Source of the DNA: Auanema rhodensis
Taxonomy: Eukaryota; Animalia; Nematoda
Assembly (NCBI GenBank): GCA_964057225.1
Contig: OZ059894.1
Coordinates: forward strand, 7,378,001-7,442,000
Direction: 5' to 3'
DNA: 64,000 nucleotides
The position numbers were made by a program, and so were the translations under genes. Below the pieces are notes generated by a model. It did not search any database. It had not been told where the DNA came from and was given only the letters and a program-made list of their open reading frames with translations. Below are positions 38,706-64,000 of this stretch, piece after piece (within the stretch, counting starts at the first letter, position 1; every line of letters starts with the position of its first letter).

Positions 38706-39483
38706 AGAGTAAAGAACTTCAAAAACTTACTAGACGTTGAAACATTTGTTAAAAATCTCTTTGCATCAAAAAGTAAAGTTTTTTCAGGATAGGAAGAAGA
38801 AGCTTGAAAGAAATGTGGAAGAAAGTTATCGAAAAGAAGGGAGAATACTAAAAGTAATAAAATGTTTCTCTAAATATTTTTTTTTGTCTATTTCATGGGA
38901 TTGCATGAGGGGCCCGAAATCAATGCAACCACTTAATATTAATTTATATCGAAAACACTTATTTGTTGACGTTAATTTATATTTGAAAGAAAATAAATCA
39001 AGATGAGTAGAGCACACGTGAAAAATGTTAATCAGTCCAAGTAAAGTTTAATGTTTAAAAAGTAAAATATACATTTAAGTCAATCCATAACTATCAGTGT
39101 GCTGTGAATTTGAATGATTGTAATCTTATCTGTAAATCCTAAAAAACTGATAGAAAATTAAAAATATCAATATATCAACGAGATCACGGGTTGAATACAG
39201 GCCCCAGCTTGAAACCTATATTGCATATGATTTATAGGATATTACAATTTGTTATTTTGGCATATAGTTACCAATTAAATATAAATGTGACCAACAGCCA
39301 AATTGTTACTGACCAAGACATAATGGTTCGGCGGCCACAACTTTTGCAATCTGCTGTTTAAGAAAAAGTTTTGATGAAGCTTTCCGTATCATATCAGAAC
39401 TTCTATCACATCGATTCTATAGATATATTGTGGTCGAAAGGTCTAGGCTTATGTTTACGTTGTTTGGTTTGTCAGGCTTAGTG

Positions 39484-39553
39484 GTGGATGTCTTCTGGCA
39501 TGATTCTCGTTTTGTGTGCGAGAGGACCCTGGTTCAAACCCCGGTTTGGCCCT
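39484..39553 (+). pseudogene. Degenerate tRNA-Pro pseudogene at the array edge
   Basis: ...GGCATGATTCTCGTTTTGTGTGCGAGAGGACCCTGGTTCAAACCCCGGTTTGGCCC plus an array-like trailer. Confidence 0.8.
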
Positions 39554-39891
39554 AGCTTTTGCTATTTGCCGTTTAAGAAAAAGTTTTGATGAAGCTTTCA
39601 GTATCGGATCTTAGATGGATTCTTTGGATGTATGGCGGCTGAAACTCTTACGCGAATTATACCGCCCTTTCCTGTCTAGTGTCTGTGGAACATTAACGGA
39701 TGTGTTCTCAGATGATATCCCTGAGAGTTACATGACCGAATGGTCAATGGTGTATAAGAGGCTGATGATTTATACGATGATATCCATGAACACGTCTAAC
39801 CCAAAACAACTAGGTGTGCCATACTCGTAGTTTGGATGCATCAGCAATAGACGGCGGATCTCTTGTGAGATGATATTCTAGAAGATAATGT

Positions 39892-39963
39892 GGCCGAATG
39901 GTCTAGGGGTATGATTCTCGCTTTGGGTGCGAGAGGTCCCGGGTTCAAATCCCGGTTCGGCCC
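39892..39963 (+). tRNA. tRNA-Pro(TGG)
   Basis: GGCCGAATGGTCTAGGGGTATGATTCTCGCTTTGGGTGCGAGAGGTCCCGGGTTCAAATCCCGGTTCGGCCC: full cloverleaf, A/B boxes, TGG anticodon, TTTT 3 nt downstream (array consensus). Confidence 0.95.
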
Positions 39964-40387
39964 AAACTTTTGCTTTCTTTTGTTTCAGAAACAGTTTTGA
40001 TAAAGCTTTCAGTTTCGGAACTTCTCTCAAATCCTTTCTTTAGATAATTTCCGGTAAAAAGGTCTAGGCTTATGGTTACGTTGTTTTGATGCATCAGGAA
40101 TAGACGGCGGATCTCTTGTGAGATGATATACTTTGAGAAAATGTCGATTGGACATTGTTTCTTGGATATATTGTGAAAAAAGCTCCAAGCTTATGATTAC
40201 CGTGTTTGGATGCATAAGGGATAGACGGCGGATCTCTTGTGAGATCATATTCTAGGAGATAATGTCGATTGGACATGGTTTCTTGGATATATTGTGATAA
40301 AAAGCTCCAAGCTTATGATTACCGTGTTTGGATGCATCAGGAATAGACGGCAGATCTCTTGTGAGATGATATTCTAGGAGATAATGT

Positions 40388-40459
40388 GGCCGAATGGTCT
40401 AGGGGTATGATTCTCGCTTTGGGTGCGAGAGGTCCCGGGTTCAAATCCCGGTTCGGCCC
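40388..40459 (+). tRNA. tRNA-Pro(TGG)
   Basis: Consensus copy. Confidence 0.95.
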
Positions 40460-41126
40460 AAACTTTTGCTTTCTTTTGTTTCAGAAACAGTTTTGATAAA
40501 GCTTTCAGTTTCGGAACTTCTCTCAAATCCTTTCTTTAGATAATTTCCGGTAAAAAGGTCTAGGCTCATGGTTACGTTGTTTGGATGCATCAGGAATAGA
40601 CGGCGGATCTCTTGTGAGATGATATACTTTGAGATAATGTCGATTGGACATTGTTTCTTGGATATATTGTGATAAAAAGCTCCAAGCTTATGATTACCGT
40701 GTTTGGATGCATCAGGAATAGACGGCGGATCTCTTGTGAGATCATATTCTAGAAGATAATGTCGATTGGACATTGTTTCTTGGATATATTGTGATAAAAA
40801 GCTCCAAGCTTATGATTACCGTGTTTGGATGCATCAGGAATAGACGGCGGATCTCTTGTGAGATGATATACTTTGAGATAATGTCGATTGGACATTGTTT
40901 CTTGGATATATTGTGATAAAAAGCTCCAAGCTTATGATTACCGTGTTTGGATGCATCAGGAATAGACGGCGGATCTCTTGTGAGATCATATTCTAGAAGA
41001 TAATGTCGATTGGACATTGTTTCTTGGATATATTGTGAAAAAAGGTCCAAGCTTATGATTAGGTTGTTTGGATGCATAAGGGATAGACGGCGTTCTCTTG
41101 TGAGATGATATTCTAGGAGATAATGT

Positions 41127-41198
41127 GGCCGAATGGTCTAGGGGTATGATTCTCGCTTTGGGTGCGAGAGGTCCCGGGTTCAAATCCCGGTTCGGCCC
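41127..41198 (+). tRNA. tRNA-Pro(TGG)
   Basis: Consensus copy. Confidence 0.95.
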
Positions 41199-41621
41199 AA
41201 TCTTTTGCTTTCTTTTTTTCAGAAACAGTTTTGATAAAGCTTTCAGTTTCGGAACTTCTCTCAAATCCTTTCTTTGGATAATTTCCGGTAAAAAGTTCTA
41301 GGCTTATGGTTACGTTGTTTGGATGCATCAGGAATAGACGGCGGATCTCTTGTGAGATGATATACTTTGAGATAATGTCGATTGGACATTGTTTCTTGGA
41401 TATATTGTGAAAAAAGCTCCAAGCTTATGATTACCGTGTTTGGATGCATAAGGGATAGACGGCGGATCTCTTGTGAGATCATATTCTAGGAGATAATGTC
41501 GATTGGACATGGTTTCTTGGATATATTGTGATAAAAAGCTCCAAGCTTATGATTACCGTGTTTGGATGCATCAGGAATAGACGGCAGATCTCTTGTGAGA
41601 TGATATTCTTGGAGATAATGT

Positions 41622-41693
41622 GGCCGATTGGTCTAGGGGTATGATTCTCGCTTTGGGTGCGAGAGGTCCCGGGTTCAAATCCCGGTTCGGCCC
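41622..41693 (+). tRNA. tRNA-Pro(TGG) variant
   Basis: A7T acceptor-stem mismatch. Confidence 0.85.
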
Positions 41694-42114
41694 AATCTTT
41701 TGCTTTCTTTTTTTCAGAAACAGTTTTGATAAAGCTTTCAGTTTCGGAACTTCTCTCAAATCCTTTCTTTGGATAATTTCCGGTAAAAAGTTCTAGGCTT
41801 ATGGTTACGTTGTTTGGATGCATCAGGAATAGACGGCGGATCTCTTGTGAGATGATATACTTTGAGAAAATGTCGATTGGACATTGTTTCTTGGATATAT
41901 TGTGAAAAAAGCTCCAAGCTTATGATTACCGTGTTTGGATGCATCAGGAATAGACGGCGGATCTCTTGTGAGATCATATTCTAGAAGATAATGTCGATTG
42001 GACATTGTTTCTTGGATATATTGTGAAAAAAGGTCCAAGCTTATGATTAGGTTGTTTGGATGCATAAGGGATAGACGGCGTTCTCTTGTGAGATGATATT
42101 CTAGGAGATAATGT

Positions 42115-42186
42115 GGCCTAATGGTCTAGGGGTATGATTCTCGCTTTGGGTGCGAGAGGTCCCGGGTTCAAATCCCGGTTCGGCCC
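42115..42186 (+). tRNA. tRNA-Pro(TGG) variant
   Basis: G5T acceptor-stem mismatch. Confidence 0.85.
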
Positions 42187-42610
42187 AAACTTTTGCTTTC
42201 TTTTGTTTCAGAAACAGTTTTGATAAAGCTTTCAGTTTCGGAACTTCTCTCAAATCCTTTCTTTAGATAATTTCCGGTAAAAAGGTCTAGGCTTATGGTT
42301 ACGTTGTTTGGATGCATCAGGAATAGACGGCGGATCTCTTGTGAGATGATATACTTTGAGATAATGTCGATTGGACATTGTTTCTTGGATATACTGTGAA
42401 AAAAGCTCCAAGCTTATGATTACCGTGTTTGGATGCATAAGGGATAGACGGCGGATCTCTTGTGAGATCATATTCTAGGAGATAATGTCGATTGGACATG
42501 GTTTCTTGGATATATTGTGATAAAAAGCTCCAAGCTTATGATTACCGTGTTTGGATGCATCAGGAATAGACGGCTGATCTCTTGTGAGATGATATTCTAA
42601 GAGATAATGT

Positions 42611-42682
42611 GGCCGAATGGTCTAGGGGTATGATTCTCGCTTTGGGTGCGAGAGGTCCCGGGTTCAAATCCCGGTTCGGCCC
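42611..42682 (+). tRNA. tRNA-Pro(TGG)
   Basis: Consensus copy. Confidence 0.95.
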
Positions 42683-43103
42683 AATCTTTTGCTTTCTTTT
42701 TTTCAGAAACAGTTTTGATAAAGCTTTCAGTTTCGGAACTTCTCTCAAATCCTTTCTTTGGATAATTTCCGGTAAAAAGTTCTAGGCTTATGGTTACGTT
42801 GTTTGGATGCATCAGGAATAGACGGCGGATCTCTTGTGAGATGATATACTTTGAGATAATGTCAATTGGACATTGTTTCTTGGATATATTGTGAAAAAAG
42901 CTCCAAGCTTATGATTACCGTGTTTGGATGCATAAGGGATAGATGGCGGATCTCTTGTGAGATCATATTCTAGGAGATAATGTCGATTGGACATGGTTTC
43001 TTGGATATATTGTGAAAAAAGGTCCAAGCTTATGATTAGGTTGTTTGGATGCATAAGGGATAGACGGCGTTCTCTTGTGAGATGATATTCTAGGAGATAA
43101 TGT

Positions 43104-43175
43104 GGCCTAATGGTCTAGGGGTATGATTCTCGCTTTGGGTGCGAGAGGTCCCGGGTTCAAATCCCGGTTCGGCCC
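43104..43175 (+). tRNA. tRNA-Pro(TGG) variant
   Basis: G5T acceptor-stem mismatch. Confidence 0.85.
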
Positions 43176-43598
43176 AATCTTTTGCTTTCTTTTTTTCAGA
43201 AACAGTTTTGATAAAGCTTTCAGTTTTGGAACTTCTCTCAAATCCTTTCTTTGGATATATTCTGGTAAAAAGGTCTAGGCTTATGGTTACGTTGTTTGGA
43301 TGCATCAGGAATAGACGGCGGATCTCTTGTGAGATGATATACTTTGGGATAATGTCGATTGGACATTGTTTCTTGGATATATTGTGATAAAAAGCTCCAA
43401 GCTTATGATTACCGTGTTTGGATGCATCAGGAATAGACGGCGGATCTCTTGTGAGATCATATTCTAGGAGATAATGTCGATTGGACATTGTTTCTTGGAT
43501 ATATTGTGAAAAAAGGTCCAAGCTTATGATTAGGTTGTTTGGATCCATAAGGGATAGACGGCGGATCTCTTCTGAGATGATATTCTAGGAGATAATGT

Positions 43599-43670
43599 GG
43601 CCGAATGGTCTAGGGGTATGATTCTCGCTTTGGGTGCGAGAGGTCCCGGGTTCAAATCCCGGTTCGGCCC
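43599..43670 (+). tRNA. tRNA-Pro(TGG)
   Basis: Consensus copy. Confidence 0.95.
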
Positions 43671-44217
43671 AAACTTTTGCTTTCTTTTGTTTCAGAAACA
43701 GTTTTGATAAAGCTTTCAGTTTCGGAACTTCTCTCAAATCCTTTCATTGGATATATTCTGGTAAAAAGGTCTATGCTTATGGTTACGTTGTTTGGATGCA
43801 TCAGGAATAGACGGCGGATCTCTTGTGAGATGATATACTTTGAGATAATGTCGATTGGACATGGTTTCTTGGATATATTGTGATAAAAAGCTCCAAGCTT
43901 ATGATTACCGTGTTTGGATGCATCAGGAATAGACGGCGGATCTCTTGTGAGATCATATTCTAGGAGATAATGTCGATTGGACATGGTTTCTTGGATATAT
44001 TGTGATAAAAAGCTCCAAGCTTATGATTACCGTGTTTGGATGCATAAGGGATAGACGGCGGATCTCTTGTGAGATCATATTCTAGGAGATAATTTCGATT
44101 GGACATGGTTTCTTGGATATATTGTGATAAAAAGGTCCAAGCTTATGATTACGTTGTTTGGATGCATAAGGGATAGACGTCGGATCTCTTGTGAGATGAT
44201 ATTCTAGGAGATAATGT

Positions 44218-44289
44218 GGCCGAATGGTCTAGGGGTATGATTCTCGCTTTGGGTGCGAGAGGTCCCGGGTTCAAATCCCGGTTCGGCCC
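44218..44289 (+). tRNA. tRNA-Pro(TGG)
   Basis: Consensus copy. Confidence 0.95.
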
Positions 44290-44713
44290 AAACTTTTGCT
44301 TTCATTTGTTTCAGAAACAGTTTTGATAAAGCTTTCAGTTTCGGTACTTCTCTCAAATTCTTTCATTGGATATATTCTGGTAAAAAGGTCTAGGCTTATG
44401 GTTACGTTGTTTGGATGCATCAGGAATAGACGGCGGATCTCTTGTGAGATGATATACTTTGGGATAATGTCGATTGGACATTGTTTCTTGGATATATTGT
44501 GATAAAAAGCTCCAAGCTTATGATTACCGTGTTTGGATGCATCAGGAATAGACGGCGGATCTCTTGTGAGATCATATTCTAGGAGATAATGTCGATTGGA
44601 CATTGTTTCTTGGATATATTGTGAAAAAAGGTCCAAGCTTATGATTAGGTTGTTTGGATCCATAAGGGATAGACGGCGGATCTCTTCTGAGATGATATTC
44701 TAGGAGATAATGT

Positions 44714-44785
44714 GGCCGAATGGTCTAGGGGTATGATTCTCGCTTTGGGTGCGAGAGGTCCCGGGTTCAAATCCCGGTTCGGCCC
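44714..44785 (+). tRNA. tRNA-Pro(TGG)
   Basis: Consensus copy. Confidence 0.95.
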
Positions 44786-45088
44786 AAACTTTTGCTTTCT
44801 TTTGTTTCAGAAACAGTTTTGATAAAGCTTTCAGTTTCGGAACTTCTCTCAAATCCTTTCATTGGATATATTCTGGTAAAAAGGTCTATGCTTATGGTTA
44901 CGTTGTTTGGATGCATCAGGAATAGACGGCGGATCTCTTGTGAGATGATATACTTTGAGATAATGTCGATTGGACATTGTTTCTTGGATATATTGTGATA
45001 AAAAGCTCCAAGCTTATGATTACCGTGTTTGGATGCATCAGGAATAGACGGCGGATCTCTTGTGAGATGATATTCTAGGAGATATTGT

Positions 45089-45160
45089 GGCCGAATGGTC
45101 TAGGGGTATGATTCTCGCTTTGGGTGCGAGAGGTCCCGGGTTCAAATCCCGGTTCGGCCC
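45089..45160 (+). tRNA. tRNA-Pro(TGG)
   Basis: Consensus copy. Confidence 0.95.
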
Positions 45161-45584
45161 AAACTTTTGCTTTCTTTTGTTTCAGAAACAGTTTTGATAA
45201 AGCTTTCAGTTTCGGAACTTCTCTCAAATCCTTTCTTTAGATAATTTCCGGTAAAAAGGTCTAGGCTTATGGTTACGTTGTTTGGATGCATCAGGAATAG
45301 ACGGCGGATCTCTTGTGAGATGATATACTTTGAGATAATGTCGATTGGACATTGTTTCTTGGATATACTGTGAAAAAAGCTCCAAGCTTATGATTACCGT
45401 GTTTGGATGCATAAGGGATAGACGGCGGATCTCTTGTGAGATCATATTCTAGGAGATAATGTCGATTGGACATGGTTTCTTGGATATATTGTGATAAAAA
45501 GCTCCAAGCTTATGATTACCGTGTTTGGATGCATCAGGAATAGACGGCTGATCTCTTGTGAGATGATATTCTAAGAGATAATGT

Positions 45585-45656
45585 GGCCGAATGGTCTAGG
45601 GGTATGATTCTCGCTTTGGGTGCGAGAGGTCCCGGGTTCAAATCCCGGTTCGGCCC
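45585..45656 (+). tRNA. tRNA-Pro(TGG)
   Basis: Consensus copy. Confidence 0.95.
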
Positions 45657-46077
45657 AATCTTTTGCTTTCTTTTTTTCAGAAACAGTTTTGATAAAGCTT
45701 TCAGTTTCGGAACTTCTCTCAAATCCTTTCTTTGGATAATTTCCGGTAAAAAGTTCTAGGCTTATGGTTACGTTGTTTGGATGCATCAGGAATAGACGGC
45801 GGATCTCTTGTGAGATGATATACTTTGAGATAATGTCAATTGGACATTGTTTCTTGGATATATTGTGAAAAAAGCTCCAAGCTTATGATTACCGTGTTTG
45901 GATGCATAAGGGATAGATGGCGGATCTCTTGTGAGATCATATTCTAGGAGATAATGTCGATTGGACATGGTTTCTTGGATATATTGTGAAAAAAGGTCCA
46001 AGCTTATGATTAGGTTGTTTGGATGCATAAGGGATAGACGGCGTTCTCTTGTGAGATGATATTCTAGGAGATAATGT

Positions 46078-46149
46078 GGCCTAATGGTCTAGGGGTATGA
46101 TTCTCGCTTTGGGTGCGAGAGGTCCCGGGTTCAAATCCCGGTTCGGCCC
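46078..46149 (+). tRNA. tRNA-Pro(TGG) variant
   Basis: G5T acceptor-stem mismatch. Confidence 0.85.
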
Positions 46150-46572
46150 AATCTTTTGCTTTCTTTTTTTCAGAAACAGTTTTGATAAAGCTTTCAGTTT
46201 TGGAACTTCTCTCAAATCCTTTCTTTGGATATATTCTGGTAAAAAGGTCTAGGCTTATGGTTACGTTGTTTGGATGCATCAGGAATAGACGGCGGATCTC
46301 TTGTGAGATGATATACTTTGGGATAATGTCGATTGGACATTGTTTCTTGGATATATTGTGATAAAAAGCTCCAAGCTTATGATTACCGTGTTTGGATGCA
46401 TCAGGAATAGACGGCGGATCTCTTGTGAGATCATATTCTAGGAGATAATGTCGATTGGACATTGTTTCTTGGATATATTGTGAAAAAAGGTCCAAGCTTA
46501 TGATTAGGTTGTTTGGATCCATAAGGGATAGACGGCGGATCTCTTCTGAGATGATATTCTAGGAGATAATGT

Positions 46573-46644
46573 GGCCGAATGGTCTAGGGGTATGATTCTC
46601 GCTTTGGGTGCGAGAGGTCCCGGGTTCAAATCCCGGTTCGGCCC
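46573..46644 (+). tRNA. tRNA-Pro(TGG)
   Basis: Consensus copy. Confidence 0.95.
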
Positions 46645-47191
46645 AAACTTTTGCTTTCTTTTGTTTCAGAAACAGTTTTGATAAAGCTTTCAGTTTCGGA
46701 ACTTCTCTCAAATCCTTTCATTGGATATATTCTGGTAAAAAGGTCTATGCTTATGGTTACGTTGTTTGGATGCATCAGGAATAGACGGCGGATCTCTTGT
46801 GAGATGATATACTTTGAGATAATGTCGATTGGACATGGTTTCTTGGATATATTGTGATAAAAAGCTCCAAGCTTATGATTACCGTGTTTGGATGCATCAG
46901 GAATAGACGGCGGATCTCTTGTGAGATCATATTCTAGGAGATAATGTCGATTGGACATGGTTTCTTGGATATATTGTGATAAAAAGCTCCAAGCTTATGA
47001 TTACCGTGTTTGGATGCATAAGGGATAGACGGCGGATCTCTTGTGAGATCATATTCTAGGAGATAATTTCGATTGGACATGGTTTCTTGGATATATTGTG
47101 ATAAAAAGGTCCAAGCTTATGATTACGTTGTTTGGATGCATAAGGGATAGACGTCGGATCTCTTGTGAGATGATATTCTAGGAGATAATGT

Positions 47192-47263
47192 GGCCGAATG
47201 GTCTAGGGGTATGATTCTCGCTTTGGGTGCGAGAGGTCCCGGGTTCAAATCCCGGTTCGGCCC
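47192..47263 (+). tRNA. tRNA-Pro(TGG)
   Basis: Consensus copy. Confidence 0.95.
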
Positions 47264-47687
47264 AAACTTTTGCTTTCATTTGTTTCAGAAACAGTTTTGA
47301 TAAAGCTTTCAGTTTCGGTACTTCTCTCAAATTCTTTCATTGGATATATTCTGGTAAAAAGGTCTAGGCTTATGGTTACGTTGTTTGGATGCATCAGGAA
47401 TAGACGGCGGATCTCTTGTGAGATGATATACTTTGGGATAATGTCGATTGGACATTGTTTCTTGGATATATTGTGATAAAAAGCTCCAAGCTTATGATTA
47501 CCGTGTTTGGATGCATCAGGAATAGACGGCGGATCTCTTGTGAGATCATATTCTAGGAGATAATGTCGATTGGACATTGTTTCTTGGATATATTGTGAAA
47601 AAAGGTCCAAGCTTATGATTAGGTTGTTTGGATCCATAAGGGATAGACGGCGGATCTCTTCTGAGATGATATTCTAGGAGATAATGT

Positions 47688-47759
47688 GGCCGAATGGTCT
47701 AGGGGTATGATTCTCGCTTTGGGTGCGAGAGGTCCCGGGTTCAAATCCCGGTTCGGCCC
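47688..47759 (+). tRNA. tRNA-Pro(TGG)
   Basis: Consensus copy. Confidence 0.95.
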
Positions 47760-48062
47760 AAACTTTTGCTTTCTTTTGTTTCAGAAACAGTTTTGATAAA
47801 GCTTTCAGTTTCGGAACTTCTCTCAAATCCTTTCATTGGATATATTCTGGTAAAAAGGTCTATGCTTATGGTTACGTTGTTTGGATGCATCAGGAATAGA
47901 CGGCGGATCTCTTGTGAGATGATATACTTTGAGATAATGTCGATTGGACATTGTTTCTTGGATATATTGTGATAAAAAGCTCCAAGCTTATGATTACCGT
48001 GTTTGGATGCATCAGGAATAGACGGCGGATCTCTTGTGAGATGATATTCTAGGAGATATTGT

Positions 48063-48134
48063 GGCCGAATGGTCTAGGGGTATGATTCTCGCTTTGGGTG
48101 CGAGAGGTCCCGGGTTCAAATCCCGGTTCGGCCC
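48063..48134 (+). tRNA. tRNA-Pro(TGG)
   Basis: Consensus copy. Confidence 0.95.
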
Positions 48135-54378: not shown

Positions 54379-54450
54379 GGCCGAATGGTCTAGGGGTATG
54401 ATTCTCGCTTTGGGTGCGAGAGGTCCCGGGTTCAAATCCCGGTTCGGCCC
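54379..54450 (+). tRNA. tRNA-Pro(TGG)
   Basis: Consensus copy. Confidence 0.95.
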
Positions 54451-54751
54451 AAACTTTTGCTTTCTTTTTTTCAGAAACAGTTTTGATAAAGCTTTCAGTT
54501 TCGGAACTTCTCTCAAATCCTTTCTTTGGATAATTTCCGGTACAAAGGTCTAGGCTTATGGTTACGTTGTTTGGATGCATCAGGAATAGACGGCGGATCT
54601 CTTGTGAGATCATATTCTAGGAGATAATGTCGATTGGACATTGTTTATTGGATATATTGTGAAAAAAGCTCCAAGCTTATGATTACCGTGTTTGGATGCA
54701 TAAGGGATAGACGGCGGATCTCTTCTGAGATGATATTCTAGGAGATAATGT

Positions 54752-54823
54752 GGCCGAATGGTCTAGGGGTATGATTCTCGCTTTGGGTGCGAGAGGTCCC
54801 GGGTTCAAATCCCGGTTCGGCCC
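54752..54823 (+). tRNA. tRNA-Pro(TGG)
   Basis: Consensus copy. Confidence 0.95.
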
Positions 54824-55004
54824 AAACTTTTGCTTTCTTTTGTTTCAGAAACAGTTTTGATAAAGCTTTCAGTTTCGGAACTTCTCTCAAATCCTTTCTT
54901 TGGATAATTTCCGGTACAAAGGTCTAGGCTTATGGTTACGTTGTTTGGATGCATCAGGAATAGACGGCGGATCTCTTGTGAGATCATATTCTAGGAGATA
55001 ATGC

Positions 55005-55076
55005 GGCCGAATGGTCTAGGGGTATGATTCTCGCTTTGGGTGCGAGAGGTCCCGGGTTCAAATCCCGGTTCGGCCC
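55005..55076 (+). tRNA. tRNA-Pro(TGG)
   Basis: Consensus copy. Confidence 0.95.
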
Positions 55077-55501
55077 AAAATTTTGCTTTCTTTTGTTTCA
55101 GAAACAGTTTTGATAAAGCTTTCAGTTTCGGAACTTCTCTCAAATCCTTTCATTGGATATATTCTGGTAAAAAGGTCTAGGCTTATGGTTACGTTGTTTG
55201 GATGCATCAGGAATAGAAGGCGGATCTCTTGTGAGATGATATACTTTGAGATAATTTCGATTGGACATTGTTTCTTGGATATATTGTGATAAAAAGCTCC
55301 AAGCTTATGATTACCGTGTTTGGATGCATCAGGAATAGACGGCAGATCTCTTGTGAGATCATATTCTAGGAGATAATGTCGATTGGACATTGTTTCTTTT
55401 ATATATTGTGATAAAAAGGTCCAAGCTTATGATTACGTTGTTTGGATGTATAAGGGATAGACGGCGGATCTCTTGTGAGATGATATTCTAGGAGATAATG
55501 T

Positions 55502-55573
55502 TGCCGAATGGTCTAGGGGTATGATTCTCGCTTTGGGTGCGAGAGGTCCCGGGTTCAAATCCCGGTTCGGCCC
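55502..55573 (+). tRNA. tRNA-Pro(TGG) variant
   Basis: G1T, first acceptor pair broken. Confidence 0.8.
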
Positions 55574-55754
55574 AAAATTTTGCTTTCTTTTGTTTCAGAA
55601 ACAGTTTTGATAAAGCTTTCAGTTTCGGAACTTCTCTCAAATCCTTTCATTGGATATATTCTGGTAAAAAGGTCTAGGCTTATGGTTACGTTGTTCGGAT
55701 GCATCAGGAATAGACGGCGGATCTCTTGTGAGATGATATACTTTGAGATAATGT

Positions 55755-55826
55755 GGCCGAATGGTCTAGGGGTATGATTCTCGCTTTGGGTGCGAGAGGT
55801 CCCGGGTTCAAATCCCGGTTCGACCC
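55755..55826 (+). tRNA. tRNA-Pro(TGG) variant
   Basis: G to A at gene position 69, acceptor-stem mismatch. Confidence 0.85.
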
Positions 55827-56007
55827 AAAATTTTGCTTTCTTTTGTTTCAGAAACAGTTTTGATAAAGCTTTCAGTTTCGGAACTTCTCTCAAATCCTTT
55901 CATTGGATATATTCTGGTAAAAAGGTCTAGGCTTATGGTTACGTTGTTTGGATGCATCAGGAATAGACGGCGGATCTCTTGTGAGATCATATTCTAGGAG
56001 ATAATGT

Positions 56008-56079
56008 GGCCGAATGGTCTAGGGGTATGATTCTCGCTTTGGGTGCGAGAGGTCCCGGGTTCAAATCCCGGTTCGGCCC
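56008..56079 (+). tRNA. tRNA-Pro(TGG)
   Basis: Consensus copy. Confidence 0.95.
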
Positions 56080-56260
56080 AAAATTTTGCTTTCTTTTGTT
56101 TCAGAAACAGTTTTGATAAAGCTTTCCGTTTCGGAACTTCTCTCAAATCCTTTCATTGGATATATTCTGGTAAAAAGGTCTAGGCTTATGGTTACGTTGT
56201 TTGGATGCATCAGGAATAGACGGCGGATCTCTTGTGAGATCATATTCTAGGAGATAATGT

Positions 56261-56332
56261 GGCCGAATGGTCTAGGGGTATGATTCTCGCTTTGGGTGCG
56301 AGAGGTCCCGGGTTCAAATCCCGGTTCGGCCC
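56261..56332 (+). tRNA. tRNA-Pro(TGG)
   Basis: Consensus copy. Confidence 0.95.
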
Positions 56333-56634
56333 AAACTTTTGCTTTCTTTTTTTCAGAAACAGTTTTGATAAAGCTTTCAGTTTCGGAACTTCTCTCAAAT
56401 CCTTTCTTTGGATAATTTCCGGTACAAAGGTCTAGGCTTATGGTTACGTTGTTTGGATGCATCAGGAATAGACGGCGGATCTCTTGTGAGATCATATTCT
56501 TGGAGATAATGTCGATTGGACATTGTTTCTTGGATATATTGTGATAAAAAGGTCCAAGCTTATGATTACGTTGTTCGGATGCATCAGGAATAGACGGCGG
56601 ATCTCTTGTGAGATGATATTCTGGGAGATAATGT

Positions 56635-56706
56635 GGCCGAATGGTCTAGGGGTATGATTCTCGCTTTGGGTGCGAGAGGTCCCGGGTTCAAATCCCGGTT
56701 CGGCCC
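56635..56706 (+). tRNA. tRNA-Pro(TGG)
   Basis: Consensus copy. Confidence 0.95.
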
Positions 56707-57251
56707 AAACTTTTGCTTTCTTTTGTTTCAGAAACAGTTTTGATAAAGCTTTCAGTTTCGGAACTTCTCTCAAATCCTTTCATTGGATATATTCTGGTAA
56801 AAAGGTCTAGGCTTATGGTTACGTTGTTTGGATGCATCAGGAATAGACGGCGGATCTCTTGTGAGATGATATACTTTGAGATAATGTCGATTGGACATTG
56901 TTTCTTGGATATATTGTGATAAAAAGCTCCAAGCTTATGATTACCGTGTTTGGATGCATCAGGAATAGACGGCGGATCTCTTGTGAGATCATATTCTAGG
57001 AGATAATGTCGATTAGACATTGTTTCTTGGATATATTGTGATAAAAAGCTCCAAGCTTATGATTACCGTGTTTGGATGCATCAGGAATAGACGGCAGATC
57101 TCTTGTGAGATCATATTCTAGGAGATAATGTCGATTGGACATTGTTTCTTGGATATATTGTGAAAAAAGGTCCAAGCTTATGATTAGCTTGTTTGGATGC
57201 ATAAGGGATAGACGGCGTTCTCTTGTGAGATGATATTCTAGGAGATAATGT

Positions 57252-57323
57252 GGCCGAATGGTCTAGGGGTATGATTCTCGCTTTGGGTGCGAGAGGTCCC
57301 GGGTTCAAATCCCGGTTCGGCCC
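57252..57323 (+). tRNA. tRNA-Pro(TGG)
   Basis: Consensus copy. Confidence 0.95.
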
Positions 57324-57867
57324 AAACTTTTGCTTTCTTTTGTTTCAGAAACAGTTTTGATAAAGCTTTCAGTTTCGGAACTTCTCTCAAATCCTTTCAT
57401 TGGATATATTCTGGTAAAAAGGTCTAGGCTTATGGTTACGTTGTTTGGATGCATCAGGAATAGACGGCGGATCTCTTGTGAGATGATATACTTTGAGATA
57501 ATGTCGATTGGACATTGTTTCTTGGATATATTGTGAAAAAAGCTCCAAGCTTATGATTACCGTGTTTGGATGCATCAGGAATAGACGGCAGATCTCTTGT
57601 GAGATCATATTCTAACAGATAATGTCGATTGAACATTGTTTCTTGGATATATTGTGAAAAAAGGTCCAAGCTTATGATTACCGTGTTTGGATGCATCAGG
57701 AATAGACGGCAGATCTCTTGTGAGATCATATTCTAGGAGATAATGTCGATTGGACATTGTTTCTTGGATATATTGTGATAAAAAGCTCCAAGCTTATGAT
57801 TAGCTTGTTTGGATGCATAAGGGATAGACGGCGTTCTCTTGTGAGATGATATTCTAGGAGATAATGT

Positions 57868-57939
57868 GGCCGAATGGTCTAGGGGTATGATTCTCGCTTT
57901 GGGTGCGAGAGGTCCCGGGTTCAAATCCCGGTTCGGCCC
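57868..57939 (+). tRNA. tRNA-Pro(TGG)
   Basis: Consensus copy. Confidence 0.95.
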
Positions 57940-58120
57940 AAACTTTTGCTTTCTTTTGTTTCAGAAACAGTTTTGATAAAGCTTTCCGTTTCGGAACTTC
58001 TCTCAAATCCTTTCATTGGATATATTCTGGTAAAAAGGTCTAGGCTTATGGTTACGTTGTTTGGATGCATCAGGAATAGACGGCGGATCTCTTGTGAGAT
58101 CATATTCTAGGAGATAATGT

Positions 58121-58192
58121 GGCCGAATGGTCTAGGGGTATGATTCTCGCTTTGGGTGCGAGAGGTCCCGGGTTCAAATCCCGGTTCGGCCC
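58121..58192 (+). tRNA. tRNA-Pro(TGG)
   Basis: Consensus copy. Confidence 0.95.
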
Positions 58193-58616
58193 AAACTTTT
58201 GCTTTCTTTTGTTTCAGAAACAGTTTTGATAAAGCTTTCAGTTTCGGAACTTCTCTCAAATCCTTTCTTTGGATAATTTCCGGTGAAAAGGTCTAGGCTT
58301 ATGGTTACGTTGTTTTTATGCATCAGGAATATACGGCGGATCTCTTGTGAGATGATATTCTAGGAGATAATGTCGATTGGACATTGTTTCTTGGATATAT
58401 TGTGATAAAAAACTCCAAGCTTATGATTACCGTGTTTGGATGCATCAGGAATAGACGGCAGATCTCTTGTGAGATCATATTCTAACAGATAATGTCGATT
58501 GGACATTGTTTCTTGGATATATTGTGAAAAAAGGTCCAAGCTTATGATTACCGTGTTTGGATGCATCAGGAATAGACGGCGGATCTCTTGTGAGATGATA
58601 TTCTGGGAGATAATGT

Positions 58617-58688
58617 GGCCGAATGGTCTAGGGGTATGATTCTCGCTTTGGGTGCGAGAGGTCCCGGGTTCAAATCCCGGTTCGGCCC
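58617..58688 (+). tRNA. tRNA-Pro(TGG)
   Basis: Consensus copy. Confidence 0.95.
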
Positions 58689-59233
58689 AAACGTTTGCTT
58701 TCTTTTGTTTCAGAAACAGTTTTGATAAAGCTTTCAGTTTCGGAACTTCTCTCAAATCCTTTCTTTGGATAATTTCCGGTAAAAAGGTCTAGTCTTATGG
58801 TTACGTTGTTTGGATGCATCAGGAATAGACGGCGGATCTCTTGTGAGATGATATACTTTGAGATAATGTCGATTGGACATTGTTTCTTGGATATATTGTG
58901 ATAAAAAGCTCCAAGCTTATGATTACCGTGTTTGGATGCATCAGGAATAGACGGCGGATCTCTTGTGAGATCATATTCTAGGAGATAATGTCGATTAGAC
59001 ATTGTTTCTTGGATATATTGTGATAAAAAGCTCCAAGCTTATGATTACCGTGTTTGGATGCATCAGGAATAGACGGCAGATCTCTTGTGAGATCATATTC
59101 TAGGAGATAATGTCGATTGGACATTGTTTCTTGGATATATTGTGAAAAAAGGTCCAAGCTTATGATTAGCTTGTTTGGATGCATAAGGGATAGACGGCGT
59201 TCTCTTGTGAGATGATATTCTAGGAGATAATGT

Positions 59234-59305
59234 GGCCGAATGGTCTAGGGGTATGATTCTCGCTTTGGGTGCGAGAGGTCCCGGGTTCAAATCCCGGTTC
59301 GGCCC
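59234..59305 (+). tRNA. tRNA-Pro(TGG)
   Basis: Consensus copy. Confidence 0.95.
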
Positions 59306-59728
59306 AAACTTTTGCTTTCTTTTGTTTCAGAAACAGTTTTGATAAAGCTTTCAGTTTCGGAACTTCTCTCAAATCCTTTCTTTGGATAATTTCCGGTAAA
59401 AAGGTCTAGTCTTATGGTTACGTTGTTTGGATGCATCAGGAATAGACGGCGGATCTCTTGTGAGATGATATACTTTGAGATAATGTCGATTGGACATTGT
59501 TTCTTGGATATATTGTGAAAAAAGCTCCAAGCTTATGATTACCGTGTTTGGATGCATCAGGAATAGACGGCAGATCTCTTGTGAGATCATATTCTAACAG
59601 ATAATGTCGATTGGACATTGTTTCTTGGATATATTGTGAAAAAAGGTCCAAGCTTATGATTACCGTGTTTGGATGCATCAGGAATAGACGGCGGATCTCT
59701 TGTGAGATGATATTCTGGGAGATAATGT

Positions 59729-59800
59729 GGCCGAATGGTCTAGGGGTATGATTCTCGCTTTGGGTGCGAGAGGTCCCGGGTTCAAATCCCGGTTCGGCCC
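59729..59800 (+). tRNA. tRNA-Pro(TGG)
   Basis: Consensus copy. Confidence 0.95.
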
Positions 59801-60345
59801 AAACTTTTGCTTTCTTTTGTTTCAGAAACAGTTTTGATAAAGCTTTCAGTTTCGGAACTTCTCTCAAATCCTTTCATTGGATATATTCTGGTAAAAAGGT
59901 CTAGGCTTATGGTTACGTTGTTTGGATGCATCAGGAATAGACGGCGGATCTCTTGTGAGATAATATACTTTGAGATAATGTCGATTGGACATTGTTTCTT
60001 GGATATATTGTGATAAAAAGCTCCAAGCTTATGATTACCGTGTTTGGATGCATCAGGAATAGACGGCGGATCTCTTGTGAGATCATATTCTAGGAGATAA
60101 TGTCGATTAGACATTGTTTCTTGGATATATTGTGATAAAAAGCTCCAAGCTTGTGATTACCGTGTTTGGATGCATCAGGAATAGACGGCAGATCTCTTGT
60201 GAGATCATATTCTAGGAGATAATGTCGATTGGACATTGTTTCTTGGATATATTGTGAAAAAAGGTCCAAGCTTATGATTAGTTTGTTTGGATGCATAAGG
60301 GATAGACGGCGTTCTCTTGTGAGATGATATTCTAGGAGATAATGT

Positions 60346-60417
60346 GGCCGAATGGTCTAGGGGTATGATTCTCGCTTTGGGTGCGAGAGGTCCCGGGTTC
60401 AAATCCCGGTTCGGCCC
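60346..60417 (+). tRNA. tRNA-Pro(TGG)
   Basis: Consensus copy. Confidence 0.95.
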
Positions 60418-60840
60418 AAACTTTTGCTTTCTTTTGTTTCAGAAACAGTTTTGATAAAGCTTTCAGTTTCGGAACTTCTCTCAAATCCTTTCTTTGGATA
60501 ATTTCCGGTAAAAAGGTCTAGTCTTATGGTTACGTTGTTTGGATGCATCAGGAATAGACGGCGGATCTCTTGTGAGATGATATACTTTGAGATAATGTCG
60601 ATTGGACATTGTTTCTTGGATATATTGTGAAAAAAGCTCCAAGCTTATGATTACCGTGTTTGGATGCATCAGGAATAGACGGCAGATCTCTTGTGAGATC
60701 ATATTCTAACAGATAATGTCGATTGGACATTGTTTCTTGGATATATTGTGAAAAAAGGTCCAAGCTTATGATTACCGTGTTTGGATGCATCAGGAATAGA
60801 CGGCGGATCTCTTGTGAGATGATATTCTGGGAGATAATGT

Positions 60841-60912
60841 GGCCGAATGGTCTAGGGGTATGATTCTCGCTTTGGGTGCGAGAGGTCCCGGGTTCAAATC
60901 CCGGTTCGGCCC
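60841..60912 (+). tRNA. tRNA-Pro(TGG)
   Basis: Consensus copy. Confidence 0.95.
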
Positions 60913-61457
60913 AAACTTTTGCTTTCTTTTGTTTCAGAAACAGTTTTGATAAAGCTTTCAGTTTCGGAACTTCTCTCAAATCCTTTCATTGGATATATTC
61001 TGGTAAAAAGGTCTAGGCTTATGGTTACGTTGTTTGGATGCATCAGGAATAGACGGCGGATCTCTTGTGAGATGATATACTTTGAGATAATGTCGATTGG
61101 ACATTGTTTCTTGGATATATTGTGATAAAAAGCTCCAAGCTTATGATTACCGTGTTTGGATGCATCAGGAATAGACGGCGGATCTCTTGTGAGATCATAT
61201 TCTAGGAGATAATGTCGATTAGACATTGTTTCTTGGATATATTGTGATAAAAAGCTCCAAGCTTGTGATTACCGTGTTTGGATGCATCAGGAATAGACGG
61301 CAGATCTCTTGTGAGATCATATTCTAGGAGATAATGTCGATTGGACATTGTTTCTTGGATATATTGTGAAAAAAGGTCCAAGCTTATGATTAGCTTGTTT
61401 GGATGCATAAGGGATAGACGGCGTTCTCTTGTGAGATGATATTCTAGGAGATAATGT

Positions 61458-61529
61458 GGCCGAATGGTCTAGGGGTATGATTCTCGCTTTGGGTGCGAGA
61501 GGTCCCGGGTTCAAATCCCGGTTCGGCCC
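61458..61529 (+). tRNA. tRNA-Pro(TGG)
   Basis: Consensus copy. Confidence 0.95.
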
Positions 61530-61831
61530 AAACTTTTGCTTTCTTTTGTTTCAGAAACAGTTTTGATAAAGCTTTCCGTTTCGGAACTTCTCTCAAATCC
61601 TTTCATTGGATATATTCTGGTAAAAAGGTCTAGGCTTATGGTTACGTTGTTTGGATGCATCAGGAATAGACGGCGGATCTCTTGTGAGATGATATACTTT
61701 GAGATAATGTCGATTGGACATTGTTTCTTGGATATATTGTGAAAAAAGCTCCAAGCTTATGATTACCGTGTTTGGATGCATAAGGGATAGACGGCGGATC
61801 TCTTCTGAGATGATATTCTAGGAGATAATGT

Positions 61832-61903
61832 GGCCGAATGGTCTAGGGGTATGATTCTCGCTTTGGGTGCGAGAGGTCCCGGGTTCAAATCCCGGTTCGG
61901 CCC
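61832..61903 (+). tRNA. tRNA-Pro(TGG)
   Basis: Consensus copy. Confidence 0.95.
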
Positions 61904-62083
61904 AAACTTTTGCTTTCTTTTGTTTCAGAAACAGTTTTGATAAAGCTTTCAGTTTCGGAACTTCTCTCAAATCCTTTCTTTCGATAATTTCCGGTAAAAA
62001 GGTCTAGGCTTATGATTAGCTTGTTTGGATGCATAAGGGATAGACGGCGTTCTCTTGTGAGATGATATTCTAGGAGATAATGT

Positions 62084-62155
62084 GGCCGAATGGTCTAGGG
62101 GTATGATTCTCGCTTTGGGTGCGAGAGGTCCCGGGTTCAAATCCCGGTTCGGCCC
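62084..62155 (+). tRNA. tRNA-Pro(TGG)
   Basis: Consensus copy. Confidence 0.95.
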
Positions 62156-62336
62156 GAACTTTTGCTTTCTTTTGTTTCAGAAACAGTTTTGATAAAGCTT
62201 TCAGTTTCGGAACTTCTCTCAAATCCTTTCATTTTATATATTCTGGTAAAAAGGTCTAGGCTTATGGTTACGTTGTTCGGATGCATCAGGAATAGACGGC
62301 GGATCTCTTGTGAGATGATATACTTTGAGATAATGT

Positions 62337-62408
62337 GGCCGAATGGTCTAGGGGTATGATTCTCGCTTTGGGTGCGAGAGGTCCCGGGTTCAAATCCCGG
62401 TTCGGCCC
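62337..62408 (+). tRNA. tRNA-Pro(TGG)
   Basis: Consensus copy. Confidence 0.95.
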
Positions 62409-62589
62409 AAAATTTTGCTTTCTTTTGTTTCAGAAACAGTTTTGATAAAGCTTTCAGTTTCGGAACTTCTCTCAAATCCTTTCATTGGATATATTCTGGT
62501 AAAAAAGTCTAGGCTTATGGTTACGTTGTTTGGATGCATCAGGAATAGACGGCGGATCTCTTGTGAGATGATATACTTTGAGATAATGT

Positions 62590-62661
62590 GGCCGAATGGT
62601 CTAGGGGTATGATTCTCGCTTTGGGTGCGAGAGGTCCCGGGTTCAAATCCCGGTTCGGCCC
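62590..62661 (+). tRNA. tRNA-Pro(TGG)
   Basis: Consensus copy. Confidence 0.95.
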
Positions 62662-62842
62662 AAAATTTTGCTTTCTTTTGTTTCAGAAACAGTTTTGATA
62701 AAGCTTTCAGTTTCGGAACTTCTCTCAAATCCTTTCATTGGATATATTCTGGTAAAAAGGCCTAGGCTTATGGTTACGTTGTTTGGATGCATCAGGAATA
62801 GACGGCGGATCTCTTGTGAGATGATATACTTTGAGATAATGT

Positions 62843-62914
62843 GGCCGAATGGTCTAGGGGTATGATTCTCGCTTTGGGTGCGAGAGGTCCCGGGTTCAAA
62901 TCCCGGTTCGGCCC
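62843..62914 (+). tRNA. tRNA-Pro(TGG)
   Basis: Consensus copy. Confidence 0.95.
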
Positions 62915-63095
62915 AAAATTTTGCTTTCTTTTGTTTCAGAAACAGTTTTGATAAAGCTTTCAGTTTCGGAACTTCTCTCAAATCCTTTCATTGGATATAT
63001 TCTGGTAAAAAGGTCTAGGCTTATGGTTACGTTGTTTGGATGCATCAGGAATAGACGGCGGATCTCTTGTGAGATCATATTCTAGGAGATAATGT

Positions 63096-63167
63096 GGCCG
63101 AATGGTCTAGGGGTATGATTCTCGCTTTGGGTGCGAGAGGTCCCGGGTTCAAATCCCGGTTCGGCCC
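63096..63167 (+). tRNA. tRNA-Pro(TGG)
   Basis: Consensus copy. Confidence 0.95.
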
Positions 63168-63348
63168 AAAATTTTGCTTTCTTTTGTTTCAGAAACAGTT
63201 TTGATAAAGCTTTCCGTTTCGGAACTTCTCTCAAATCCTTTCATTGGATATATTCTGGTAAAAAGGTCTAGGCTTATGGTTACGTTGTTTGGATGCATCA
63301 GGAATAGACGGCGGATCTCTTGTGAGATCATATTCTAGGAGATAATGT

Positions 63349-63420
63349 GGCCGAATGGTCTAGGGGTATGATTCTCGCTTTGGGTGCGAGAGGTCCCGGG
63401 TTCAAATCCCGGTTCGGCCC
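63349..63420 (+). tRNA. tRNA-Pro(TGG)
   Basis: Consensus copy. Confidence 0.95.
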
Positions 63421-63844
63421 AAACTTTTGCTTTCTTTTGTTTCAGAAACAGTTTTGATAAAGCTTTCAGTTTCGGAACTTCTCTCAAATCCTTTCTTTGG
63501 ATAATTTCCGGTAAAAAGGTCTAGGCTTATGGTTACGTTGTTTGGATGCATCAGGAATAGACGGCGGATCTCTTGTGAGATGATATTCTAGGAGATAATG
63601 TCGATTGGACATTGTTTCTTGGATATATTGTGATAAAAAGCTCCAAGCTTATGATTACCGTGTTTGGATGCATCAGGAATAGACGGCAGATCTCTTGTGA
63701 GATCATATTCTAACAGATAATGTCGATTGGACATTGTTTCTTGGATATATTGTGAAAAAAGGTCCAAGCTTATGATTACCGTGTTTGGATGCATCAGGAA
63801 TAGACGGCGGATCTCTTGTGAGATGATATTCTGGGAGATAATGT

Positions 63845-63916
63845 GGCCGAATGGTCTAGGGGTATGATTCTCGCTTTGGGTGCGAGAGGTCCCGGGTTCA
63901 AATCCCGGTTCGGCCC
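63845..63916 (+). tRNA. tRNA-Pro(TGG)
   Basis: Consensus copy. Confidence 0.95.
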
Positions 63917-64000
63917 AAACTTTTGCTTTCTTTTGTTTCAGAAACAGTTTTGATAAAGCTTTCAGTTTCGCAACTTCTCTCAAATCCTTTCATTGGATAT

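What the first reader, a model, noticed from the sequence alone, without database searches (positions are those of the whole stretch)
39421..64000. The array's spacer satellite is itself a degenerate tRNA-Pro
Seen: tRNA with leader GAGATAATGTGGCCGAATGGTCTAGGGGTATGATTCTCGC-TTTGGGTGCGAGAGG aligns with the spacer motif GATATATTGTGAAAAAAGGTCCAAGCTTATGATTACCGTGTTTGGATGCATCAGG and with its variant in the 253-bp unit, GGTCTAGGCTTATGGTTACGTTGTTTGGATGCATCAGG. D-arm/A-box and anticodon-loop (TTTGG) residues are kept; the T-arm/B-box is gone. An intermediate survives at the edge (39422: GATATATTGTGGTCGAAAGGTCTAGGCTTATG). Each 121-mer also begins GGAGATAATGT-CGATTGGAC, like the tRNA start lacking GGC. Inference: a satellite born in place from dead tRNA copies and now co-amplified with live genes. 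It may yield tRNA-half-like RNAs or supply repeated upstream elements.
Basis: partly seen in the sequence, partly recalled or inferred. Interest (0 to 1): 0.8.

Follow-up and report, generated by a model that had tools for sequence, protein, structure and literature searches.

The report
tRNA-array spacer satellite made of tRNA relics
In a tandem array of proline tRNA genes, probably from a nematode, the 121-base repeats that fill the spacers are decayed leftovers of the same gene, which shows step by step how a satellite forms inside a gene array; I found no sign that these repeats have a function.

Summary
From 39892 to the window end there are 54 intact tRNA-Pro(TGG) genes. Their spacing is 253 + n x 121 bases, with n from 0 to 6.

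Every spacer carries one to seven copies of a "p" element, 141 in all. This element is 68-71% identical to the 11-base leader plus positions 1-45 of the tRNA.
- Against dinucleotide shuffles the match gives z 4.3-7.9 for the array consensus and z 8-11.6 for an older copy at the array edge (0 of 3000 shuffles).
- It also beats all control tiles from the rest of the window that do not touch a tRNA relic.

p is dead:
- its anticodon stem no longer pairs;
- it has no B box;
- the generic tRNA model does not see it;
- only 37 of 141 copies keep the tRNA's D-arm octamer.

The 46 bases after p show no tRNA homology.

The tRNA-less 121-mer (87 copies, one shared junction) is a 253-base unit that lost about 132 bases: the tRNA body and most of the trailer.

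The tRNA bodies are 6-16 times less variable than their flanks, so they are probably under selection. The relics most likely ride along passively through unequal crossing-over.

I have no usable RNA evidence. The organism is probably the nematode Auanema rhodense; I did not establish this myself. tRNA-derived tandem repeats and decayed array ends are known, so this is a new member of a known kind.

The parts
39892..64000 (+). Tandem array of 54 tRNA-Pro(TGG) genes with quantised spacers. It runs off the window end.
   Evidence: gene spacing is 253 + n x 121; 141 p elements; tRNA bodies are 16% of the array and tRNA-less monomers 44%
62843..62914 (+). Representative intact tRNA-Pro(TGG) gene
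   Evidence: ARAGORN. Five array genes in the scanned stretch 39000-42300 score 51-58 bits on RF00005 against a threshold of 29; this gene has the same consensus sequence. 46 of 54 genes are identical and 8 differ by one base.
62740..62796 (+). Type-A p element: an 11-base leader-like stretch plus a relic of tRNA positions 1-45. Type A always follows a trailer.
   Evidence: 71% identical to leader + tRNA 1-45; alignment A1; 53 such copies
62797..62842 (+). Tail plus true leader: the 46 bases directly upstream of every tRNA gene, also present in every monomer
   Evidence: no significant similarity to the T arm or trailer; 62 of 62 identical between the 253-base and 121-base consensus units
62915..62992 (+). 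Trailer after the tRNA, with T4 runs from +4 onward (likely Pol III terminators)
   Evidence: sequence; diversity 0.024 against 0.004 in the tRNA
63621..63742 (+). Representative tRNA-less 121/122-base monomer, containing a type-B p element, the tail, the leader and the junction
   Evidence: 87 such monomers (46 of 121 bases, 41 of 122), mean diversity 0.051, no T4 run on the + strand
63724..63742 (+). The 19-base junction that replaces about 150 bases (tRNA plus trailer) of the 253-base unit
   Evidence: global alignment; all 87 junctions are one sequence with point variants; 7 of 9 match to tRNA positions 4-12, or a 6-bp inverted repeat with the leader
39422..39474 (+). Older p element at the array edge, closest to the tRNA in the acceptor and D-arm part (28 of 35 identical including the leader)
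   Evidence: z 8-11.6, 0 of 3000 shuffles
39475..39552 (+). Degenerate tRNA-Pro whose 5' part is deleted; ARAGORN calls it tRNA-Thr(tgt)
   Evidence: RF00005 19.5 bits, below the 29-bit threshold; 77% identical to the array unit
39332..39421 (+). tRNA 3'-end remnant plus a decayed trailer belonging to an old edge unit
   Evidence: blastn against the 253-base unit: positions 67-236 match 39332-39504 at 75%
39733..39755 (+). Isolated relic of the tRNA 5' end (positions -2 to 21)
   Evidence: 19 of 23 aligned columns identical, z 2.5-4.5, 9-54 of 3000 shuffles; weaker than the other relics
39830..39891 (+). 3' part of a p element plus tail and leader in front of the first intact gene. This is the left boundary of the homogenised array.
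   Evidence: 95% identical to the monomer. The unique sequence just to its left (39796-39825) appears as the loose end of contigs in two independent DNA runs.
37506..37618 (+). Solitary decayed full-length tRNA-Pro with the same trailer, 2.3 kb left of the array
   Evidence: 78% identical to unit positions 2-114; sequence; not called by ARAGORN
42115..48062 (+). Two tandem copies of a 2974-base higher-order segment, each with six genes
   Evidence: 1 mismatch in 2974

Best explanation
The spacer repeat is a passive relic of the array's own gene.

Inferred step 1: a DNA-level duplication copied at least 11-22 bases of 5' flank plus tRNA-Pro(TGG). One copy kept only positions 1-45. It lost the T arm and the 3' acceptor strand, or never had them. 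This gave a 253-base unit: tRNA, trailer, p relic, tail and leader.

Shown by collinearity, step 2: one such unit then lost about 132 bases, namely the tRNA body and most of the trailer. This created a tRNA-less 121-base monomer with a single shared junction.

Shown by pattern, step 3: unequal crossing-over or replication slippage, in 121-base and 253-base registers, spread both forms. Genes are now separated by 0-6 extra monomers, and multi-gene segments are duplicated nearly without change.

Inferred from diversity: selection acts on the tRNA bodies, while the relics drift.

Inferred from lost promoter parts: the relics are not expected to be transcribed on their own by RNA polymerase III, because they lack a B box, a pairing anticodon stem and a terminator.
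For: Homology of p to leader + tRNA 1-45 is 68-71% identity. It is significant against shuffles and against real-sequence tiles.

The homology includes the 5' flank, so this was a DNA duplication and not retroposition.

The edge of the array keeps older, less homogenised units, including a p closer to the tRNA.

The 121-mer is collinear with the 253-base unit: 62 of 62 bases, then a 19-base junction, then about 85% identity. All 87 junctions share one origin.

Spacers are quantised. A 2974-base duplicate is 99.97% identical.

Diversity is 0.004 in the tRNA, against 0.024 in the trailer, 0.052 in p and 0.065 upstream. Variable sites are 5 of 72 against 51 of 186, Fisher p 0.0002.

Signs of decay in p:
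- only 37 of 141 keep the D-arm octamer, and there is no B-box-like site;
- there is no T4 run in the monomer;
- there is no RF00005 hit at E up to 10.
Against: No RNA data could be brought to bear. All runs are assembled contigs, and the only possibly-RNA run is a guess. Silence of the relics is therefore inferred, not shown.

The B-type monomer folds somewhat better than shuffles (z -2.2, 5 of 200). Its three D-arm substitutions all strengthen one hairpin. This could hint at constraint, or it could be ascertainment bias.

The low tRNA diversity could partly reflect subfamily structure in the flanks rather than selection.

Whether p was ever a complete gene cannot be decided.
Confidence: 0.77

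Rival explanations
1. The relics are functional. They would be transcribed into tRNA-half-like or hairpin RNAs, or they would act as repeated upstream, TFIIIC or chromatin elements that tune expression or silencing of the neighbouring genes.
For: Every gene has the same 46-base upstream segment, and each monomer repeats it. The B-type monomer folds at z -2.2, and three substitutions strengthen a hairpin between the D-arm and anticodon-loop remnants. Low-depth contigs of a run guessed to be RNA cover 48286-48435.
Against: p has no B box, has lost the A-box octamer in 104 of 141 copies, and has no terminator. The RNA label of run X13 is a guess and DNA carry-over is not excluded. The hairpin was read off the very sequence in which it is strongest. 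Monomer number per spacer varies freely from 0 to 6, which does not suggest a dosage-sensitive element.
Confidence: 0.1
2. p was never a whole gene. A partial duplication by slippage or illegitimate recombination copied only the flank plus the first 45 bases of the tRNA, so the satellite derives from a gene fragment rather than from 'dead tRNA copies'.
For: Homology stops sharply at about position 45. The following 46 bases show nothing of the T arm or trailer. The same p-tail joint is already present in the old edge unit.
Against: Nothing argues directly against it. The array edge does hold full-length decayed copies (37506-37618 and 39475-39552), so whole-gene decay does occur at this locus.
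Confidence: 0.1
3. The resemblance arises by chance, by shared composition, or from the way the assembly collapsed a repeat.
For: One individual unit under strict scoring was not significant. The generic tRNA covariance model does not detect p.
Against: 0 of 3000 shuffles reach the observed score for the edge copy and, in two of four schemes, for the consensus. Control tiles without a tRNA relic stay at 13 or below, against 17 and 21. Independent DNA runs from several studies hold the same monomers and the same array-edge joint.
Confidence: 0.03

Closest known systems
Tandem tRNA gene arrays evolving by unequal crossing-over, for example the Arabidopsis Ser-Tyr-Tyr array (PMC2886086) and the irregularly spaced Pro clusters (PMC7544208)
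   Same: Head-to-tail tRNA units, concerted evolution, copy-number change by unequal exchange, and the most divergent or pseudogenic copies at the array ends. In Arabidopsis the clustered Pro genes are likewise 'not regularly interspaced'.
   Different: Here the irregular spacing is resolved into whole numbers of one 121-base monomer, and that monomer is itself a deletion derivative of the gene unit. The organism is probably a nematode, not a plant. The sequences are unrelated to the plant clusters as far as I can tell (not tested).
Plant satellites proposed to descend from a tRNA gene (Benslimane et al. 1986, cited in PMC4411372)
   Same: A short tandem repeat whose monomer shows homology to a tRNA gene (title seen; the paper itself was not held).
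   Different: Those are large stand-alone satellites in which the tRNA link is only a distant similarity. Here the donor gene, the intermediate forms and the derived monomer lie side by side in one array, so the descent can be read directly.
tRNA arrays of Auanema rhodense germline DNA (bioRxiv 10.64898/2026.08.27.747507)
   Same: The preprint reports 19,554 tRNA loci, tandem tRNA blocks, and RNA-gene density always under 20% per 10 kb. Here the tRNA bodies are 16% of the array. Earlier scan notes assign this genome to that species.
   Different: In the text I read, the preprint describes the arrays only in outline and does not discuss the origin of the spacers. It counts only 215 tRNA pseudogenes, and relics such as p would escape that annotation. 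I did not verify the species assignment independently.
tRNA-derived SINEs
   Same: Both are repeats descended from a tRNA.
   Different: SINEs spread through RNA, keep A and B boxes, are dispersed, and do not carry the donor's 5' flank. p carries the 5' flank, lacks a B box, and in this window occurs only in and at the edge of the array.

Membership tests
Functional tRNA gene (Rfam RF00005), applied to the p element | Cloverleaf recognised by the covariance model at or above 29 bits | tested here: not met
   No hit on any p element at E up to 10 in 39000-42300. The real genes score 51-58 bits.
Functional tRNA gene (Rfam RF00005), applied to the p element | Internal Pol III promoter with A box and B box | tested here: not met
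   No B-box-like site within 3 mismatches on either strand. The A-box/D-arm octamer is intact in 37 of 141 copies.
Functional tRNA gene (Rfam RF00005), applied to the 54 array genes | Model score above threshold, intact anticodon, and sequence conservation relative to flanks | tested here: met
   Scores of 51-58 bits for the five array genes in the scanned stretch 39000-42300. 46 of 54 genes are identical. Diversity is 0.004 against 0.024-0.065 in the flanks. Expression was not tested.
tRNA-derived satellite / tandem repeat | Monomer with statistically supported homology to a tRNA gene | tested here: met
tRNA-derived satellite / tandem repeat | Head-to-tail monomers amplified without the gene | tested here: met
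   87 tRNA-less monomers in runs of up to 6 per spacer
tRNA-derived satellite / tandem repeat | Long arrays that exist independently of the parent genes | tested here: inconclusive
   Within the window the monomer occurs only inside the array and at its edge. Public runs show very high word depth and a few joints to unlike sequence, but no long pieces. The rest of the genome could not be searched.
tRNA-derived SINE | A and B boxes, dispersed copies, no donor 5' flank | tested here: not met
Tandem gene array under unequal crossing-over | Quantised unit lengths, near-identical higher-order duplicates, and the most divergent units at the array end | tested here: met

The most novel reading that the evidence does not exclude
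The relic monomers are not inert. The B-type monomer would have been reshaped by three pair-strengthening substitutions into a hairpin-forming unit. Its transcripts, or its DNA structure, would then serve the germline, for example as a source of small RNAs that mark the array for silencing or for programmed elimination, or as the recombination substrate that sets tRNA gene dosage.
Probability: 0.06. Interest if true: 0.7.

Novelty: new member of a known kind. Interest (0 to 1): 0.38.

Why it matters
The array is an unusually legible record of how a satellite arises. The donor gene, a half-gene relic, a gene-less deletion derivative and older frozen copies at the array edge all lie within 27 kb, so the order of events can be read from the sequence.

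It also shows that standard tRNA annotation under-counts tRNA-derived DNA in such genomes. In this array about a quarter of the bases are unrecognised tRNA relics, on top of the 16% that are genes.

If the genome is that of Auanema rhodense, it adds detail to the repeat blocks that this worm builds up and partly discards from its body cells.

It does not, on present evidence, reveal a new mechanism or function.

Tried and rejected
1. I first took the window for the Arabidopsis chromosome-1 tRNA-Pro cluster and read plant papers. I rejected this for three reasons. Earlier scan notes on the same genome call it a nematode. The neighbouring zinc-finger gene has short introns ending in TTTCAG or TTTTCAG. 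A 2026 preprint on Auanema rhodense fits the tRNA load. I could not confirm the species myself: Pfam and atlas scans of window ORFs were uninformative, an exact-protein look-up found nothing, and run names were coded.

2. It gave no hit.

3. I looked for T-arm or trailer homology in the 46-base tail. There was none.

4. I tested a single unit with strict scoring. It was not significant, so I repeated the test with the consensus, several scoring schemes and a real-sequence control.

5. For expression, the look-up of sequencing runs listed no holder on record as RNA. Read laying gave only contigs, so neither transcription nor copy number can be read from them. I gave the reads tools spacer-only stretches, because the tRNA body is close to human tRNA-Pro.

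6. Benslimane 1986 could not be read.

7. The bacterial, viral and metagenome collections were not searched, because they are not suited to a eukaryotic satellite.
Full report
WHAT IS THERE. ARAGORN finds 54 tRNA-Pro(TGG) genes on the + strand between 39892 and 63916, plus one degenerate gene at 39475-39552. Tandem Repeats Finder reports periods of 122, 253, 374 and 496 bases over the same region. Distances between gene starts are 253 + n x 121 bases, with n from 0 to 6. The array runs off the end of the window. Between one and seven copies lie between neighbouring genes.

p falls into two classes linked to position.
- Type A always follows a gene trailer. There are 53 copies, and their D-arm remnant is mostly the same as in the tRNA.
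- Type B always follows the gene-less junction. There are 87 copies, and their D-arm remnant has changed at two or three bases.

IS THE RESEMBLANCE TO THE tRNA REAL? Yes. I aligned the 15-base leader plus the 72-base tRNA locally against the rest of the 253-base consensus unit, and compared the score with 3000 dinucleotide-preserving shuffles under four scoring schemes.
- Array consensus: z = 4.3 to 7.9, with 0 to 9 shuffles reaching the observed score.
- Older copy at the array edge (39380-39474): z = 8.0 to 11.6, with no shuffle reaching it. That alignment has 28 of 35 identical bases and spans the leader, acceptor stem and D arm.
- tRNA body without the leader: z = 3.3 to 5.5.
- Real-sequence control: I scored the same query against 409 tiles of 190 bases from window 1-39000. 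The mean was 8.1, and the best tiles free of any tRNA relic reached 13. The spacer scored 17 and the edge copy 21. The higher-scoring tiles, including one at 14, all touch a previously unnoticed decayed tRNA-Pro at 37506-37618.
- End-to-end alignment: p is 68-71% identical to the 11-base leader plus tRNA positions 1-45, and the anticodon TGG is retained in the loop remnant.
- Caveat: one individual unit with a private mutation, under the strictest scoring, was not significant. The generic tRNA covariance model does not see p at E up to 10. The case rests on specific sequence homology, not on tRNA-like structure.

WHAT IS NOT tRNA-DERIVED. The homology stops at about position 45. The following 35-46 bases (the tail plus the real leader) show no significant similarity to the tRNA's 3' third or to the trailer (z -0.2 to 2.5). 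So "the satellite is a degenerate tRNA" is true for about 45 of 121 bases, plus the leader-like 11.

THE 121-MER. A global alignment shows how the 121-base consensus relates to the 253-base unit.
- The first 62 bases are identical.
- The last 42 bases or so are about 85% identical.
- A 19-base junction stands in for about 150 bases, namely the tRNA body and most of the trailer.

All 87 junctions are one sequence with point variants, so the deletion happened once and the product was then amplified.

It matches tRNA positions 4-12 at 7 of 9 bases. The same bases also form a perfect 6-bp inverted repeat with the leader, as fold-back filler at a repaired break would. I cannot choose between these two readings, and they are not exclusive.

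HISTORY READ FROM THE EDGE. Left of the first intact gene lie older, diverged pieces:
- a tRNA 3' end plus trailer (39332-39421);
- the edge p (39422-39474);
- a 5'-deleted degenerate tRNA (39475-39552; 19.5 bits);
- its trailer;
- an isolated 5' relic (39733-39755; weaker, z 2.5-4.5);
- a half p with tail and leader (39830-39891).

These pieces are 75-77% identical to the array unit. The joint between p and the tail is already present in the edge unit, so p predates the homogenised array. Divergent copies stranded at array ends are what unequal crossing-over predicts, and the same was described for the Arabidopsis Ser-Tyr-Tyr array (PMC2886086). The homology covers at least 11, and perhaps about 22, bases of 5' flank. 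The founding event was therefore a DNA duplication, not retroposition.

LIVE GENES, DRIFTING RELICS. Of the 54 genes, 46 are identical and 8 differ by one base. In a MAFFT alignment of 53 units, nucleotide diversity is as follows.

| Segment | Diversity |
|---|---|
| tRNA body | 0.004 |
| Trailer | 0.024 |
| p | 0.052 |
| 46 bases upstream of the gene | 0.065 |

Variable sites number 5 of 72 in the tRNA against 51 of 186 in the flanks (Fisher p = 0.0002). This fits purifying selection on the tRNA bodies. Subfamily structure in the flanks may contribute to the difference.

By contrast p shows several signs of decay.
- Its anticodon stem no longer pairs (sequence).
- Only 37 of 141 copies keep the tRNA's D-arm octamer.
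- There is no B-box-like site within 3 mismatches.
- The monomer has no run of four T on the + strand.

From what is established about type-2 Pol III promoters, which need an A box and a B box and terminate at T runs, p should not be transcribed on its own. Transcription of each gene should stop at the T4 runs that begin four bases after it.

ARRAY DYNAMICS. A 2974-base segment holding six genes is repeated in tandem with one mismatch. This is either a very recent exchange or an assembly copy. tRNA bodies make up 16% of the array and gene-less monomers 44%. p relics account for about a quarter of the bases.

OUTSIDE EVIDENCE. Fourteen public runs from six studies, under five coded organism labels, hold words of the spacer. 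None is on record as RNA.

I laid four runs on a spacer-only stretch (48135-48435).
- Two DNA runs under other organism labels cover it fully, at very high summed word depth.
- The same two runs carry, as a loose end, the unique sequence that abuts the array at 39796-39825. They therefore contain this same locus.
- A run guessed to be RNA has a few low-depth contigs over 48286-48435. This cannot be told apart from DNA carry-over.

Expression therefore remains untested. I kept the tRNA body out of the reads tools because it is close to human tRNA-Pro.

ORGANISM. I first assumed a plant and was wrong. Three things point to a nematode:
- earlier notes of this scan on the same genome call it a nematode, probably Auanema rhodense;
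- the neighbouring zinc-finger gene has short introns ending in TTTCAG or TTTTCAG;
- a 2026 preprint reports 19,554 tRNA loci and tandem tRNA blocks, with RNA-gene density under 20% per 10 kb, in that species.

I did not verify the species independently.

VERDICT. The functional suggestions are unsupported. One loose thread remains. The B-type monomer folds slightly better than shuffles (z -2.2), and its three D-arm substitutions all strengthen one hairpin with the anticodon-loop remnant. I rate this as probably an ascertainment effect. tRNA-derived tandem repeats and decayed array ends are known ideas, so this is a clear, well-documented new member of a known kind. It is of moderate interest, mainly as a worked example of satellite birth and as a warning that tRNA-derived DNA is under-annotated in such genomes.

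Noticed in passing
window 37506-37618 (+): A solitary decayed full-length tRNA-Pro with about 40 bases of the array's trailer, 78% identical to the array unit. It has a different 5' flank and was missed by ARAGORN.
   Followed up: partly
window 35718-37192 (+): A C2H2 zinc-finger gene with five exons and four short GT..AG introns of 96-327 bases. Three introns end in TTTCAG or TTTTCAG, a nematode-style acceptor. The gene sits directly left of the array region.
   Followed up: partly
window 42115-45088 and 45089-48062: A 2974-base six-gene segment of the array repeated in tandem with a single mismatch. This is either a very recent unequal exchange or an assembly duplicate.
   Followed up: partly
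window 63724-63742 and the 86 other junctions: The deletion junction of the 121-mer forms a perfect 6-bp inverted repeat with the leader (arms AATGTC and GACATT, 5-base loop). This suggests fold-back filler DNA at the repair site.
   Followed up: partly
window 40660-40781 (type-B monomer): Three substitutions that separate type B from type A in the D-arm remnant all convert wobble or mismatched positions into Watson-Crick pairs with the anticodon-loop remnant (9-bp hairpin). The monomer fold has z -2.2.
   Followed up: partly
window 48279 and 48293 (contigs of runs X6 and X12): Contigs leave the spacer repeat into 105-255 bases of unlike sequence. Copies of parts of the monomer therefore exist in another context, or at the far edge of the array.
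   Followed up: no
window 9674-10070: About 40 tandem copies of the 10-base unit ACAAACCTTA.
   Followed up: no
window 5936-6283 (+): An open frame with a divergent glutamine-synthetase N-terminal motif (Pfam Gln-synt_N, E 0.0012, below the curated cut-off). It may be a decayed exon.
   Followed up: no
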